Positions 909-34,985 of a stretch of 64,000 bases of DNA are shown one piece after another (position 1 is the first letter of the stretch; the number at the start of each line of letters is the position of its first letter). The notes beneath the pieces are model-generated. The model made no database searches and was not told the DNA's origin. It saw only the letters and a list, made by a program, of their open reading frames with translations. The DNA is taken from sequence record ON190025.1. One strand, written 5' to 3'. The position numbers were made by a program, and so were the translations under genes.

Positions 909-2453
909 ATGAACCTAACTGAAAAATGGAAAGAATTGCTTGAAGCAGACGGTGCGGAAATGCCAGAGATTGCGACTGCAACTAAGCAAAAAATCATGTC
1001 GAAAATCTTTGAAAACCAAGATCGCGACATCAACAACGATCCAATGTACCGTGACCCACAGTTAATCGAAGCATTCAATGCTGGTCTAAACGAAGCTGTA
1101 GTTAACGGTGACCATGGTTACGATCCGTCTAACATCGCTCAAGGTGTTACTACTGGTGCAGTAACAAACATCGGTCCGACTGTAATGGGTATGGTTCGTC
1201 GTGCTATTCCTCAGCTTATCGCATTCGATATCGCTGGTGTTCAGCCAATGACTGGCCCAACTAGCCAAGTATTCACACTTCGCTCAGTATACGGTAAAGA
1301 CCCGCTAACTGGTAAAGAAGCTTTCCACCCGACTCGTCAAGCTGACGCTTCGTTCTCTGGTCAAGCTGCTGCATCAACAATTGCAGATTTCCCAACTACT
1401 GGTGCTGCAACTGACGGTACTCCGTACAAAGCTGAAGTAACTACTTCTGGTGGCGACGTTGACACTCGTTACTTCCTAGCACTTGGCGCTGTTACTCTAG
1501 CAGTTGCAGGTGAAATGACTGCTACAGAATACACTGACGCAGTTGCAGGTGGTCTTCTAGTTGAGATCGACGCTGGTATGGCAACATCTCAGGCTGAACT
1601 ACAAGAGAACTTCAACGGTTCAAGCAACAACGAGTGGAACGAGATGTCATTCCGCATCGACAAACAAGTTGTTGAAGCGAAATCACGTCAATTGAAAGCT
1701 CAATACTCAATCGAGCTTGCACAAGATCTACGTGCTGTACACGGTCTAGACGCTGACGCTGAACTTAGCGGTATTCTTGCTAACGAAGTTATGGTTGAGC
1801 TTAACCGCGAAATCGTTAACCTAGTTAACTCTCAAGCGCAAATCGGTAAGTCTGGTTGGACTCAAGGTCAAGGCGCAGCGGGTGTATTCGACTTCGCAGA
1901 CGCTGTAGACGTTAAAGGTGCTCGTTGGGCTGGTGAAGCTTACAAAGCTCTACTAATTCAAATTGAGAAAGAAGCGAACGAAATCGGTCGTCAAACTGGT
2001 CGTGGTAACGGTAACTTCATCATTGCATCACGCAACGTAGTTTCTGCACTATCAATGACTGATACTCTTGTTGGCCCTGCTGCACAAGGTATGCAAGACG
2101 GTTCAATGAACACTGACACAAACCAAACTGTGTTCGCGGGTGTTCTAGGTGGTCGCTTCAAAGTGTTCATCGACCAATACGCAGTGAACGATTACTTCAC
2201 AGTTGGTTTCAAAGGTTCTACTGAAATGGACGCAGGTGTGTTCTACTCACCATACGTACCGCTGACTCCACTACGTGGTTCAGACAGCAAGAACTTCCAA
2301 CCTGTAATTGGTTTCAAAACTCGTTACGGTATTCAAGTTAACCCATTCGCAGATCCTACTAAGGCTGCTGAAAAAGTTGGTAACGGCGCGCCTGTTGCTG
2401 CTTCAATGGGTAAGAACGCGTACTTCCGCAGAGTATTTGTCCGTGGCCTTTAA
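909..2453 (+). CDS. 23: Major capsid protein gp23
   Basis: LNE|AVVNGDHGY processing site, GVQPMTGPT, KSRQLKAQYSIELAQDL and YVPL motifs; 514 aa. Confidence 0.99.
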   Translation: MNLTEKWKELLEADGAEMPEIATATKQKIMSKIFENQDRDINNDPMYRDPQLIEAFNAGLNEAVVNGDHGYDPSNIAQGVTTGAVTNIGPTVMGMVRRAIPQLIAFDIAGVQPMTGPTSQVFTLRSVYGKDPLTGKEAFHPTRQADASFSGQAAASTIADFPTTGAATDGTPYKAEVTTSGGDVDTRYFLALGAVTLAVAGEMTATEYTDAVAGGLLVEIDAGMATSQAELQENFNGSSNNEWNEMSFRIDKQVVEAKSRQLKAQYSIELAQDLRAVHGLDADAELSGILANEVMVELNREIVNLVNSQAQIGKSGWTQGQGAAGVFDFADAVDVKGARWAGEAYKALLIQIEKEANEIGRQTGRGNGNFIIASRNVVSALSMTDTLVGPAAQGMQDGSMNTDTNQTVFAGVLGGRFKVFIDQYAVNDYFTVGFKGSTEMDAGVFYSPYVPLTPLRGSDSKNFQPVIGFKTRYGIQVNPFADPTKAAEKVGNGAPVAASMGKNAYFRRVFVRGL

Positions 2454-2500: not shown

Positions 2501-3598
2501 TTATAGACTATGCAAATATTTGTAGGCTATATTAACACGTTCATCTGTTAGAGCTTCGCCGTATGCAGGACCTGGTTCAACGTCAACTTTGACATTTCGA
2601 GTCAAGTCGATTATTTCAGTGATTACAATTCGTTTAACTTCATCAGTAATCTGGGAAAGTGCAACTTGGAATGGTAGATGCCCTTTGTATGCGCCTATTT
2701 TCTCAAGAATTAAAATGATTGTTTCATCAAAAACACTTGCATATTCCATCTGCATTAGCATCTGAGATGCCTTTCTGAATTGCTTAGTTTCACCGAAGTA
2801 TGAACCGAAACGTTGGCGACGGTTTAACGCAGCCCATTTTGCCATCAACTGAACATCTTCACAGTGAAACGGCATTCGTCTGAAGTGTCGAAGAGATTGA
2901 AGCTCATGTACGGTTGGTCTCGGTGAGAACCCAACCTGACTTAGAAACACAAAGTACATGTGCGCGTCTTTCTCTGATAGTGCTTTTTGAGTCTCTAACC
3001 AAACACGTTCTTTCGGTAGATTCTCAAGCATACCGTCGTTGATCATTTTCTTGCATAGCTCAACTGTCTCTTCTGCGACTGTGAATCCCATGCTGTAGTA
3101 TCGAGCATAGAAACGAGCGACGCGCAGAACACGTAACGGGTCTTCGGCAAACGCTTCAGTTGTATGACGAAGAATCTTGTTCTTCAAGTCATCTAGACCG
3201 CCGTACGGGTCGATGACATCATCAGTCGAACCAAACATGAACAAACTATTTGGCGTCATGTCAGGTATAGCCATTGAGTTGATAGTCAGATCTCGTCGTG
3301 ATAAGTCATCTTCTAACGTGACACCTTCCGTTGTGAAAGTGAAGTCAGTAGTTTTACCGCCAGTGCTACGCTCTACACGAGCAAGCGCGACTTCATTGTT
3401 GTCTTTATCGAGCCAAACAGGGAAATCAGCGCCGATTGGTTCACCGTACATAGACATCATTTGTTCGTGTGTACAACCAGTGACGACGTAATCAATATCT
3501 TTCGGGAAGCTAGACCAACCATCTACGTGTTTCAGAATAGAGTCGCGTACTGCACCCCCGACAATGTATTTTTGCATCAAGTTCATTTTCGCTTTCAT
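2501..3598 (-). CDS. cca: CCA-adding tRNA nucleotidyltransferase
   Basis: YIVGGAVRD, KDIDYVV, DLSRRDLTINSMA and EDPLRVLRVARF class II motifs; GGAG RBS. Confidence 0.95.
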   Translation of the reverse strand: MKAKMNLMQKYIVGGAVRDSILKHVDGWSSFPKDIDYVVTGCTHEQMMSMYGEPIGADFPVWLDKDNNEVALARVERSTGGKTTDFTFTTEGVTLEDDLSRRDLTINSMAIPDMTPNSLFMFGSTDDVIDPYGGLDDLKNKILRHTTEAFAEDPLRVLRVARFYARYYSMGFTVAEETVELCKKMINDGMLENLPKERVWLETQKALSEKDAHMYFVFLSQVGFSPRPTVHELQSLRHFRRMPFHCEDVQLMAKWAALNRRQRFGSYFGETKQFRKASQMLMQMEYASVFDETIILILEKIGAYKGHLPFQVALSQITDEVKRIVITEIIDLTRNVKVDVEPGPAYGEALTDERVNIAYKYLHSL

Positions 3599-32543: not shown

Positions 32544-33368
32544 ATGGCTATCAAAGATAAATTGGAAGAACTTATTGCGTCGGTTCACCAATGTACTACC
32601 AAAGACGGTGTAGTTGAAATCGAGAAACTATATACGCAAAAGAAAAAAGAACTCGGGGCGAACATCACACCGATGATGGACATTCGTGTTCGAGACGCAA
32701 TTCGCGGCAAAATCACCATGTTTGACAAAGAATCTGCTGCTGAAAAAGAAGAAGCAACGATGAAGAAACAACAACAAGAAGCTGAAGCAATTGCAGCTAA
32801 ACTTGATGAGGGTCTATTTGTCGTTTCGGAAAAAGATTTCTTCGAACATGAAACCGTTGTGAATGAGTGTGCGATTGACGCTGCGTGTATCATGGACGTG
32901 GATTCAAGCATTCCTTCAGTTGGTCATAAAGAATTGACTAAAACATTATCTGAAGCGTGTGAACACGTTGGTGCTGTTGGTAAAGTGTTTGTACCTGAAG
33001 CTCAGAACAAGGTTTTATCACTTCAAGAGCGCGTTGAATTATTTGAATCGTTCTCTGATGTCGATGTTGCACCGAAAGGCGTGATGTTTGCTGAAGTAGA
33101 GACTATGATTCAAAAAGGTATCACTCGCGTGTTTGCATTTGTAGAAGCGAACAAAGTAGCTGAGTATCGCCGTCTAGGTCGTCACTTCCTACGTGTAGGT
33201 GGAACACGATTCGAGATCGTTGAAGTCAAGAACAAAGTACCATCTAGTACTATTGAAAATCTGATTCGCGAAGATAATCTGCACGAATTCATGCGCAGCG
33301 TACCATTACCACTTGATGAAGCAGAGAAGATCTTTGATCGTCAACTTGAGCAAATCTTGGGGGCATAA
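32544..33368 (+). CDS. UvsW.1-like domain fused to degenerate HIGH-family nucleotidyltransferase-like domain
   Basis: N-terminus CTTKDGVVEIEKLY...DIRVRDAIRGK vs T4 UvsW.1 CQTLEGLEELEAYY...DISVRDALAGK; C-terminus IPSVGH...SSTI...FMRSVP. Confidence 0.65.
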   Translation: MAIKDKLEELIASVHQCTTKDGVVEIEKLYTQKKKELGANITPMMDIRVRDAIRGKITMFDKESAAEKEEATMKKQQQEAEAIAAKLDEGLFVVSEKDFFEHETVVNECAIDAACIMDVDSSIPSVGHKELTKTLSEACEHVGAVGKVFVPEAQNKVLSLQERVELFESFSDVDVAPKGVMFAEVETMIQKGITRVFAFVEANKVAEYRRLGRHFLRVGGTRFEIVEVKNKVPSSTIENLIREDNLHEFMRSVPLPLDEAEKIFDRQLEQILGA

Positions 33369-33847
33369 TGAGTGTAGCTAAACGTGGTGCAGATGGTTTT
33401 TATGCTCTTCGTCTGTCTCGTTTGCTTCATCTTCGTTTTGAACGTTGGGAAGCATATCGAATGGGTATCATCGACGCAGATGGTAAGAAGTTGCGTGACC
33501 CTGTAACTGCACAAGAGAAAAGTAACTGGACGATGTTTCATGTTACTGTGAGAAATATCAAGCGCATGGTTGGTGCATTACCAGGTGGTAAAACAGCACT
33601 TGATTATGGCGCGTCTTATTTGTTGCTGATTGAGCTTGCAAAAGAATACGGGTTATCTGAAGATTTCGCGAAAGAGTGTATTCGAGTCGAAGAAGCTGTT
33701 GTTGCAGGTGATGCGGGTGACGGTAGTAGCTCACCAGAGTCGATTGCTTCTGGTGAAACGACTGGTGCTGTAACTAATGCAGGTCCTGAAACTATCGGTA
33801 AGAAAAAGAAAAAGAAAAAGCTGAAGAAGTTCAGACATTTCGAATAA
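33368..33847 (+). CDS. Conserved T4-like protein (often annotated gp61.1-like) with gp23 N-arm-like C-terminus
   Basis: WEAYRMGIIDADG...FHVTVRNIKR; C-terminus AVVAGD...IASGETTGAVTNAGP plus poly-Lys. Confidence 0.75.
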   Translation: MSVAKRGADGFYALRLSRLLHLRFERWEAYRMGIIDADGKKLRDPVTAQEKSNWTMFHVTVRNIKRMVGALPGGKTALDYGASYLLLIELAKEYGLSEDFAKECIRVEEAVVAGDAGDGSSSPESIASGETTGAVTNAGPETIGKKKKKKKLKKFRHFE

Positions 33848-33848
33848 T

Positions 33849-33906
33849 AAAACGCCTCGGAAACGGGGCTTTTTTATGTTTATCGTATCGTGATGCCGTG
33901 TATAAT
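33849..33906 (+). promoter_or_regulatory. Terminator followed by class II promoter for primase
   Basis: Hairpin plus T6 (33849-33875); GTTTAT(33878)-17-TATAAT(33901). Confidence 0.7.
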
Positions 33907-33926
33907 CACTACACGGAGGTTGAATT

Positions 33927-34985
33927 ATGCAAATATTGATTGATATACAATACGCCAAGATGCTTCAGCATCGATTACTACTCCCTACGGTGCATAGTCA
34001 TCGTCCATTCAAAATCAATGCAAGATGCCCGATTTGTGGTGACTCGAAAAAGAACAAGTACAAGACACGTTTCTGGATTAATGAAGTTAAGACACGTTCT
34101 GGTGAGATTCATTTACGTTGTAGTTGCTGGAACTGTGACTATAACGAATCGCTGTATACTTTTTTGAAAGATCACGAACCATCGTTGTTTTCTCAGTATC
34201 GCGTCGAGTTATTCAAAGAGCGCAATTCTCGTGAGCGTAAAGAACGCGAACCTGAACCAGTCGTTGAAAAGAAAGAAGCGACTGTCGTTGAGAAAGAACA
34301 AGAAGAGCAACTTTTCTATAATATCACTGCCCTTAAAGATGGTCATGTGATGCACAAATACCTCGAATCTAGAAAAATCCCTAAAGACAAGTGGCATTTG
34401 CTTGGGTTTACTCGTGGCTGGTCTCAAATGGCTAAGACGCTTCGCCCAGATTTGTACGAAGGTGAGATTAGAAATGACCACCCTCGATTGGTAATACCTA
34501 TCTATAACAAAGAAGGTTTGATTGCTGTTCAAGGTCGTGCGTTGACAAACAAACATGCTCAACGATACATGACCATTAAAATTGACGACGATTTCAACAA
34601 GATATACGGCACAGAGCGTATCAATGAAGATGACCCTGTTATTTTCGTTGAGGGCCCGATTGATAGTTTATTCCTCTACAATTGCTGTGCTATAGTAGGT
34701 GGACAAGTCAGTCCACAAAATGCACCCTATGCGGGGAATCGCATTTGGGCGCTTGATAATGAGCCTCGCCACCCAGACGTTGTAAAGCGTCTTCAAGTTC
34801 TAATCAGAGCGGGTGAGCGTGTTGTTATTTGGGATAAGCTCCCACCTCAAATTATTGATAAGAAAGACATCAATGATTTTGTCAAAGCTGGTGTATCTGC
34901 TGAGTTCATTCAGCAATACATTTATGAAAATGCCGTTAGCGGTCTAATGGCTACAAATCGACTTAACAGATGGAAGAAAATTTAA
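33927..34985 (+). CDS. 61: DNA primase gp61
   Basis: CPICGDS...CWNC zinc ribbon; RLVIP, EGPIDSLF and DNEPR TOPRIM motifs. Confidence 0.97.
   Translation: MQILIDIQYAKMLQHRLLLPTVHSHRPFKINARCPICGDSKKNKYKTRFWINEVKTRSGEIHLRCSCWNCDYNESLYTFLKDHEPSLFSQYRVELFKERNSRERKEREPEPVVEKKEATVVEKEQEEQLFYNITALKDGHVMHKYLESRKIPKDKWHLLGFTRGWSQMAKTLRPDLYEGEIRNDHPRLVIPIYNKEGLIAVQGRALTNKHAQRYMTIKIDDDFNKIYGTERINEDDPVIFVEGPIDSLFLYNCCAIVGGQVSPQNAPYAGNRIWALDNEPRHPDVVKRLQVLIRAGERVVIWDKLPPQIIDKKDINDFVKAGVSAEFIQQYIYENAVSGLMATNRLNRWKKI

What the first reader, a model, noticed from the sequence alone, without database searches (positions are those of the whole stretch)
33692..33847. C-terminal mimic of the mature gp23 N-arm in a separate late protein
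Seen: ORF 33368 ends EE-AVVAGDAGDGSSSPESIASGETTGAVTNAGP followed by poly-Lys. Mature gp23 of this phage begins (LNE|)AVVNGDHGYDPSNIAQGVTTGAVTNIGP (1092-1178). AVV-x-GD-x-G, P-x-x-IA-x-G-x-TTGAVTN-x-GP are shared. Established: the gp23* N-arm makes inter-subunit contacts on the capsid interior. Inference: gp21 cleavage could release a peptide that fills N-arm sites left vacant at the portal or gp24 vertices, with the basic tail contacting DNA.
Basis: partly seen in the sequence, partly recalled or inferred. Interest (0 to 1): 0.72.

Follow-up and report, generated by a model that had tools for sequence, protein, structure and literature searches.

The report
Capsid-protein N-terminus copy in gp61.1
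A small conserved phage protein (gp61.1) ends in a copy of the cut site and first ~35 residues of the mature major capsid protein. The copy changes along with each phage's own capsid protein, so gp61.1 is probably an unrecognised head-interior protein that the head protease trims.

Summary
ORF 33368-33847 is the gp61.1 homologue of a KVP40-like Vibrio phage. Residues 107-148 match gp23 residues 60-98 (BLASTP E=3e-8; profile-profile 97.8%, E=1e-12). A profile of the module finds only T4 gp23 in the PDB (E=9e-11).

The likeness runs through the whole family. In 62 of 62 phages the module follows an aliphatic-x-Glu motif, which is the gp21 protease site. It copies the 25-residue gp23 "N-fist" and arm up to the Arg-Arg, then ends in a basic tail.

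It co-varies modestly but significantly with the cognate gp23 (0.579 vs 0.527 identity, p~1e-4). In Sinorhizobium phage phiN3 the capsid N-terminus is quite different, and the tail follows it.

T4 gp61.1 is the module alone. Its first ten residues match the capsid-targeting propeptides of T4 internal proteins IPI-III.

Best reading: a precursor that is taken into the prohead, cut by gp21, and releases a basic capsid-arm-like peptide.

The gene is not late (T4 61.1 mRNA is early, as are the IP mRNAs). The gp23 N-fist also ends up on the capsid exterior.

Presence in virions and the peptide's final role are untested.

The parts
33368..33847 (+). gp61.1 homologue (159 aa, stop included)
   Evidence: ORF list. 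Matches phrog_2086 over its full length, E=1.6e-53. Equivalent to KVP40.0019, which a phi-pp2 comparison lists as gp61.1. The matching genes are named 61.1 in the Ac42, RB16 and RB43 records.
33368..33667 (+). N-terminal helical domain (residues 1-100)
   Evidence: AlphaFold2 pLDDT is 77-98 over residues 1-100, all helical. No PDB fold match, best E=3.7. The domain occurs in 1156 50%-identity clusters.
33686..33694 (+). Val107-Glu108-Glu109, the predicted prohead-protease (gp21-type) site, with the cut after Glu109
   Evidence: Aligns with Leu60-Asn61-Glu62 of gp23. An aliphatic-x-Glu sits here in 62/62 family members. The L/I-x-E rule for gp21 is from PMC9026906.
33695..33790 (+). Copy of the mature gp23 N-terminus (N-fist-like module, residues 110-141)
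   Evidence: Nine of 29 aligned columns are invariant or nearly so in both families.
33791..33844 (+). Short arm-like stretch and polybasic tail (residues 142-159)
   Evidence: The profile alignments run on to the gp23 Arg-Arg. All 33 full proteins checked have at least 4 Lys/Arg in the 16 residues after the Gly-Pro.
33854..33879 (+). Terminator-like hairpin and T run ending the transcription unit
   Evidence: Consensus scan.
909..2453 (+). gp23 major capsid protein, the template of the mimic
   Evidence: Pfam Gp23, E=4.9e-120. The Pfam model starts at residue 86, so it does not cover the shared segment.
1086..1202 (+). gp23 residues 60-98: Leu-Asn-Glu site, N-fist and arm up to the Arg-Arg
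   Evidence: The role of this region in T4 is from PMC9958956 and PMC9546572.
863..870 (+). TATAAATA late-promoter box ahead of gp23. There is none ahead of 61.1.
   Evidence: Pattern search.
32544..33368 (+). Upstream neighbour with a UvsW.1 domain. Its stop overlaps the 61.1 start.
   Evidence: Pfam PF11637, E=2.5e-33.
33927..34985 (+). Primase gp61, the conserved downstream neighbour
   Evidence: phrog_47. The same order is seen in KVP40, T4, RB43, Moon and Melville.

Best explanation
The ORF is the long form of gp61.1, a near-core protein of T4-like phages. Its C-terminal module is a paralogous copy of one gp23 segment. That segment spans the maturation cleavage site, the 25-residue N-fist and the arm up to the conserved Arg-Arg. 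The copy ends in a Lys/Arg tail in place of the capsid body.

Proposed mechanism:
1. The protein is made from early times, as the internal proteins are.
2. It is taken into the prohead core. The N-terminal part serves as the targeting propeptide. In T4 this is a 10-residue IP-type capsid targeting sequence. In long forms such as this one it is perhaps the 100-residue helical domain, or the gp23-like segment itself, binding whatever the gp23 N-terminal region binds inside the prohead.
3. The gp21-type protease cuts after the Glu of the aliphatic-x-Glu motif (Glu109 here).
4. This releases a basic peptide of about 50 residues whose N-terminus mimics that of mature gp23.

Shown: the homology, the motif conservation, the co-variation with the cognate capsid protein, the CTS likeness in T4, and the early mRNA class.

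Inferred: entry into the prohead, the cleavage, and the fate of the peptide.
For: - Homology with gp23 residues 55-99.
- An aliphatic-x-Glu lies directly before the module in 62/62 phages. It is kept even where the register shifts by one residue. It matches the gp21 L/I-x-E rule.
- Cognate pairs are more alike than non-cognate pairs: 0.579 vs 0.527 identity over 18 clades, permutation p~1e-4. The cognate gp23 ranks in the top 3 for 10 of 18 clades.
- In phiN3 the capsid N-terminus after Leu-Gln-Glu is of a different type, and the 61.1-like tail copies it. 12 of 21 residues are identical. It is the best six-frame hit in the 50 kb of the genome searched.
- Six metagenomic homologues carry tails of the marine capsid type, up to the Arg-Arg.
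- T4 gp61.1 residues 1-10 share 7/10 residues with the IPII/IPIII propeptides and 7/7 with the IPI start. They include the positions 4, 7, 8 and 10 that PMC9026906 names as targeting and processing determinants.
- All short forms found in T-even relatives keep a leader of this type; those of the Aeromonas 44RR/25-like phages have a longer, more diverged one.
- T4 61.1, ipI-III and gene 40 mRNAs are all classed early.
- The module was detected in 59 of about 68 long T4-like contigs that carry this type of gp23.
Against: - There is no direct evidence that the protein is in proheads or virions. The T4 head mass-spectrometry paper and its held supplements do not mention it. It was not quantified in the T4 infected-cell proteome.
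- The window protein has Val at P3, not the canonical Leu/Ile. It has no CTS-like leader.
- Most T-even forms have Asp at P1', and I could not check whether gp21 accepts that.
- Published T4 capsid maps report no unassigned density of this kind. The one exception is helical density under gp24.
Confidence: 0.5

Rival explanations
1. After cleavage the peptide is built into the capsid lattice at places where no gp23 N-terminus is available, next to gp24 pentons or the portal. The basic tail lies on the DNA.
For: - The module copies the N-fist, which in T4 touches four subunits.
- It co-varies with the cognate gp23.
- The CTS in T4 makes entry into the head plausible.
Against: - The N-fist lies on the outer surface after expansion, while a packaged peptide and the DNA are inside.
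- gp23-invariant His8, Tyr10 and Ile27 are replaced in almost all 61.1 proteins by small or charged residues.
- gp24's own N-terminus already fills the penton-adjacent sites.
- No such density is reported in the published maps.
Confidence: 0.1
2. The protein is a cytoplasmic pseudo-substrate for the prohead protease. It is made early and soaks up or competes for stray gp21 activity. This would protect unassembled gp23, or host protease-sensing immune proteins, from being cut. It is never packaged.
For: - Early mRNA.
- A conserved cleavage-site context.
- A 2026 preprint reports that gp21 activity is sensed by CBASS CD-NTase loops outside the head.
- In T4 the neighbouring genes dmd and 61.2 (tifA) are counter-defence genes.
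Against: - The T4 form carries a capsid targeting leader.
- The mimic runs about 35 residues past the site, far beyond protease subsites.
- Near-universal conservation across hosts is unusual for a counter-defence gene.
Confidence: 0.15
3. The protein is an assembly regulator. Inside or at the nascent prohead, the module competes with gp23 N-terminal regions for the scaffold core or the portal. It thereby tunes nucleation, head length or the timing of expansion. Cleavage ends its action.
For: - T4 length-altering mutations map to this gp23 region, which is thought to contact the core.
- Gene 40, another early head-assembly factor, lies in the same gene block.
- The basic tail would suit the acidic scaffold protein.
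Against: There is no direct evidence. This model overlaps the best explanation and differs only in what the protein does once it is in the prohead.
Confidence: 0.15
4. The protein is a decoy for a host immune sensor that recognises the capsid protein, such as Lit, which responds to the Gol segment of gp23.
For: - Early expression.
- Co-variation with the cognate capsid protein.
- gp23 is a known immune trigger.
Against: - From my own recollection, which no tool result confirmed, the Gol segment begins just after the copied region. 61.1 diverges into a Lys tail exactly there.
- Conservation across phages of Vibrio, Aeromonas, Acinetobacter, enterobacteria and Sinorhizobium argues for a phage-internal partner.
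- No PADLOC or anti-defence family match.
Confidence: 0.06
5. The module is a relic of an old partial duplication of gene 23 with no present link to the capsid.
For: The segment is short, and AlphaFold confidence there is low, pLDDT 52-72.
Against: - Invariant columns are kept across more than 60 phages.
- The site motif is kept in 62/62.
- Cognate co-variation includes a switch of type in phiN3.
- Codons differ while residues are kept.
Confidence: 0.03

Closest known systems
T4 gp61.1 (54 aa, 'hypothetical protein', gene between 61.2/tifA and primase gene 61)
   Same: The C-module is homologous: E=5e-10, 19/37 identical. It sits in the same place upstream of gene 61. It shows the same likeness to its own gp23, E=6e-9.
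   Different: T4 has only the module, behind a 10-residue IP-type leader. The window protein has a 100-residue helical domain there instead. No function is published for either in the literature I could search.
T4 internal proteins IPI, IPII, IPIII and their capsid targeting sequences
   Same: The T4 61.1 N-terminus matches their propeptides and ends in the same I-x-E cut site. The products are small and basic. The mRNAs are early.
   Different: The window protein lacks such a leader, and its predicted cut is internal, after residue 109. The IP mature parts do not resemble gp23. Packaging of 61.1 has not been shown.
gp23 N-terminal region (end of the propeptide, cleavage site, N-fist, N-arm) of T4-like capsids
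   Same: About 45 aligned residues. Gly, Asp, Ile, Ala, Thr and Pro are kept at nine columns and the site is in the same register.
   Different: 61.1 has no HK97-fold body and no Pfam Gp23 match. gp23's invariant His, Tyr and Ile are replaced. A Lys tail takes the place of the hydrophobic arm and the Gol-type segment.
Long N-terminal propeptides of head proteins in giant phages (SPN3US, phiKZ group)
   Same: Propeptides of more than 100 residues are removed at x-x-Glu sites by a gp21-related protease. This is a possible analogy for the 109-residue N-part here.
   Different: The families are unrelated, and the analogy was not tested.

Membership tests
gp61.1 family (PHROG 2086; C-module alone = PHROG 1823) | Significant full-length profile match | tested here: met
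   phrog_2086 E=1.6e-53 over residues 1-153. phrog_1823 E=2.5e-17 over residues 102-152.
gp61.1 family (PHROG 2086; C-module alone = PHROG 1823) | Lies directly upstream of primase gene 61 | tested here: met
   Seen in the window, KVP40, F86, D480, T4, RB43, Moon and Melville.
gp61.1 family (PHROG 2086; C-module alone = PHROG 1823) | Homology to T4 gp61.1 itself | tested here: met
   BLASTP E=5e-10.
T4-type internal / prohead core proteins processed by gp21 | N-terminal capsid targeting sequence of about 10 residues | tested here: not met
   The window protein starts with a helical domain. No IP-like leader occurs anywhere in the window. The T4 and T-even orthologues do meet this feature.
T4-type internal / prohead core proteins processed by gp21 | L/I-x-E cleavage motif at the propeptide boundary | tested here: inconclusive
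   The window has Val-Glu-Glu. Across the family P3 is Leu 28, Val 13, Met 11, Ile 10 of 62. Actual cleavage was not tested.
T4-type internal / prohead core proteins processed by gp21 | Physically present in proheads or virions | not testable with these tools
   Not reported in the T4 head mass-spectrometry paper or its held supplements.
Major capsid protein gp23 (Pfam PF07068, HK97 fold) | HK97-fold body (A and P domains) and a match to the family model | tested here: not met
   No Pfam Gp23 hit. Only 45 residues align, and they lie N-terminal to the Pfam model. The GenBank labels 'major capsid protein' and 'capsid vertex protein' for this ORF are over-annotations.
Anti-defence or defence proteins | Match to a known family | tested here: not met
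   No PADLOC or NCBIfam hit.

The most novel reading that the evidence does not exclude
The 61.1 family is a general system of stand-ins for the capsid protein's N-terminus. A targeting propeptide (the helical N-domain or a CTS) brings the protein into the prohead. After the protease cut, the peptide takes the place of a gp23 N-terminus in the shell, at vertex-adjacent or portal-adjacent positions, or transiently to time expansion. It would then be a so far unseen structural or regulatory capsid component that must co-evolve with the major capsid protein. As a corollary, the same N-domain would deliver other cargo domains into heads in marine T4-like phages.
Probability: 0.12. Interest if true: 0.85.

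Novelty: new variant of a known kind. Interest (0 to 1): 0.66.

Why it matters
gp61.1 is one of the conserved "hypothetical" genes of T4-like phages, and T4 head assembly is a textbook system whose parts list is thought to be complete.

Three features point to an overlooked head-interior component: a protein that copies the capsid protein's cut site and N-fist, that tracks the cognate capsid protein across very distant phages, and that in T4 carries the same targeting leader as the internal proteins.

The finding also hints that the classic capsid targeting sequence may itself derive from the segment of gp23 just before its cut site.

It gives a concrete, checkable prediction: a peptide starting right after a defined Glu. 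It also corrects mis-annotations ("major capsid protein") in public records.

Tried and rejected
- **Recent gene conversion.** Rejected. DNA identity is 57%, with different codons under identical residues.
- **Likeness to gp24.** None.
- **Further copies in the window.** None.
- **Late promoter ahead of 61.1.** None.
- **Fold of the N-domain.** No PDB match. BFVD returns only uncharacterised phage proteins.
- **Pfam, NCBIfam, PADLOC.** Nothing for 61.1.
- **Literature on gp61.1.** Only gene-table mentions.
- **"Every N-domain protein carries a capsid mimic".** Rejected. Melnitz's homologue has an unrelated C-terminal domain and no match to its own capsid protein.
- **Neighbourhoods of two marine homologues.** The contigs were too short to reach a capsid gene.
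- **Guessing gp23 coordinates in complete genomes.** This cost one wasted fetch. Pairing IMG/VR loci by contig name worked better.
- **An early version of the motif parser.** It mis-registered the Vibrio sequences and was corrected.
- **Per-column test.** It ran on only five coarse clades and is not informative.

Full report
**What the window is.** Bases 32544-34985 are 100% identical to Vibrio phages phi-ST2, R11Z, XZ1 and others, and 85% identical to KVP40. The window is therefore from a KVP40-like T4-type phage (Schizotequatrovirus). gp23 is 909-2453, behind a TATAAATA box at 863. The ORF in question, 33368-33847, lies 32 kb away in the block uvsX-40-41-nrdD-nrdG-...-61-dut.

**The observation.** It is correct to the base. 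Residues 107-148 of the ORF align with gp23 residues 60-98: 21/42 identical, E=3e-8. There are only two copies of the motif in the window. The DNA of the two segments is 57% identical and uses different codons under many identical residues.

**Identity of the ORF.** It is gp61.1. It matches phrog_2086 over its full length. Its N-part alone matches phrog_18642, and its C-part alone matches the 54-residue family phrog_1823. tblastn finds it in 656 phage records; the matching genes in Ac42, RB16 and RB43 are named 61.1. It always sits just upstream of primase gene 61. Some records label it "major capsid protein", "capsid vertex protein" or "gp23-like" because of this match. It has no Pfam Gp23 hit, and the Pfam model starts only at gp23 residue 86.

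**Anatomy.** Residues 1-100 form a confidently predicted helical domain with no known fold. The C-module is predicted with low confidence. The N-domain occurs in 1156 50%-identity clusters and carries several different C-termini.

**The likeness is family-wide.** T4 gp61.1 (54 aa) is the C-module alone. It matches T4 gp23 residues 57-93 (E=6e-9) and does not match gp24. A profile of 15 modules finds only T4 gp23 chains in the PDB, E=9e-11, at residues 62-101. hhalign gives 97.8%.

According to the T4 head literature this stretch is the end of the propeptide, the gp21 cut site, the unusual 25-residue N-fist and the start of the N-arm. It is disordered and inside the shell in the unexpanded prohead, where it probably touches the core. 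It moves to the outer surface on expansion.

**Column pattern.** I paired 61.1 and gp23 from 62 phages by contig name, using IMG/VR loci plus fetched records.
- Nine of 29 aligned columns are invariant or nearly so in both families: columns 6, 7, 9, 15, 16, 18, 22, 28, 29.
- Three gp23-invariant bulky residues (columns 8, 10, 27) are replaced in nearly all 61.1 proteins.
- An aliphatic-x-Glu lies directly before the module in 62/62, with P3 = Leu 28, Val 13, Met 11, Ile 10. It is kept even in the eight cases where the register shifts by one residue.
- All 33 full proteins checked have a basic tail.
- The motif fits the gp21 rule L/I-x-E.

**Co-variation.**
- At the level of 18 clades, cognate identity is 0.579 against 0.527 for non-cognate pairs, permutation p~1e-4. 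With five coarse clades p=0.03.
- The effect comes from several lineages: the Vibrio group, Aeh1-like and 44RR/25-like Aeromonas phages, one environmental lineage, and one Erwinia-type lineage. It is absent in the core T-even group. The clades are not fully independent, so the p-value is optimistic.
- The strongest single case is Sinorhizobium phage phiN3. Its capsid N-terminus is of a different, N-fist-less type, and the tail of its 61.1-like protein copies that type: 12/21 identical, and the best six-frame hit in the 50 kb of the genome searched.
- Six metagenomic homologues have tails of the marine capsid type, like the Melnitz capsid N-terminus, up to the Arg-Arg.
- Melnitz's own homologue has another C-terminal domain and no mimic. 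The rule therefore holds for one architecture of the family, not for all.

**A link to the internal proteins.** Read from the T4 record, the first ten residues of gp61.1 share 7/10 positions with the IPII/IPIII propeptides and 7/7 with the start of IPI. All short forms found in T-even relatives keep a leader of this type; the Aeromonas 44RR/25-like forms have a longer, more diverged one.

PMC9026906 describes these propeptides as capsid targeting sequences. Targeting determinants are at residues 4 and 7, and processing determinants at residues 8 and 10. T4 gp61.1 has an aromatic residue, Phe, Ile and Glu at those four positions. The last nine residues of the gp23 propeptide show the same pattern in the same register. 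This is an inference only.

**Timing.** T4 61.1 mRNA is classed early, and its protein was not quantified. ipI-III and gene 40 are also early at the mRNA level and late at the protein level. The gene is thus not late, but early transcription does not exclude a head role. In the window there is no late box within 11 kb upstream, and a terminator-like hairpin follows the gene.

**Reading.** The most economical account is a prohead-targeted precursor that is cut by the gp21-type protease and releases a basic peptide with a gp23-like N-terminus. What the peptide then does is open. The options are to compete with gp23 N-termini for the core, to sit in the shell, to bind DNA, or simply to leave. Rival readings are scored in their own sections: a cytoplasmic pseudo-substrate (prompted by the preprint on protease-sensing CBASS), a decoy for capsid sensors, and a relic.

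There is no evidence yet that the protein is in heads.

- Before fetching them, I recalled from memory, in my reasoning only, a stretch of the T4 gp23 N-terminus and the ten-residue IP leader. Every sequence statement above rests on tool output.
- I also fetched the T4 record by an accession that I knew, not one that a tool had shown me. Independent T4-like pairs from IMG/VR (L124/L058 and others) give the same result.

Noticed in passing
L002:4967-5131 (T4 61.1) and L204 (T4 ipI, ipII, ipIII): The first ten residues of T4 gp61.1 match the capsid targeting propeptides of the T4 internal proteins. All short-form 61.1 genes found in T-even relatives keep a leader of this type; the Aeromonas 44RR/25-like forms have a longer, more diverged one.
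   Followed up: yes
L003:4946-6511 (T4 gp23 residues 57-65): The end of the gp23 propeptide has an aromatic residue, Phe, an aliphatic residue and Glu in the same register as CTS positions 4, 7, 8 and 10. The targeting sequence may itself derive from this gp23 segment.
   Followed up: partly
window 33368-33667; proteins P0018-P0166: The helical N-domain of 61.1 occurs in more than 1000 protein clusters. It is fused to at least three kinds of C-terminus. Two of these are unrelated domains common in marine T4-like phages. Neighbouring genes there include DUF7207 and a ribonucleotide reductase.
   Followed up: partly
window 33368-33847, in GenBank records MT612989, MT612988, OR538032 and others: Public records label this ORF 'major capsid protein', 'capsid vertex protein' or 'capsid protein'. 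Only 45 residues resemble gp23, so these are over-annotations.
   Followed up: yes
window 33803-33823: The Lys tract is encoded by an uninterrupted AAG/AAA run. Runs of this kind can cause ribosome slipping. This was not examined.
   Followed up: no
window 32544-33368: The upstream gene fuses a 56-residue UvsW.1 domain to about 200 further residues of unknown function. Its stop codon overlaps the 61.1 start (ATGA).
   Followed up: no
window 2501-3598 (- strand): A tRNA nucleotidyltransferase-like gene lies directly after gp23 on the opposite strand, as in phages F86 and D480.
   Followed up: no
L009:5773-8336 (Salmonella phage Melville): There are two tandem genes annotated as capsid vertex protein (gp24-like).
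   Followed up: no
L099 (IMG/VR contig of 221116 bp, Aeromonas Ah1-like): In the fetched locus the gp23 reading frame is interrupted once near the N-terminus. I left this pair out of the statistics.
   Followed up: no
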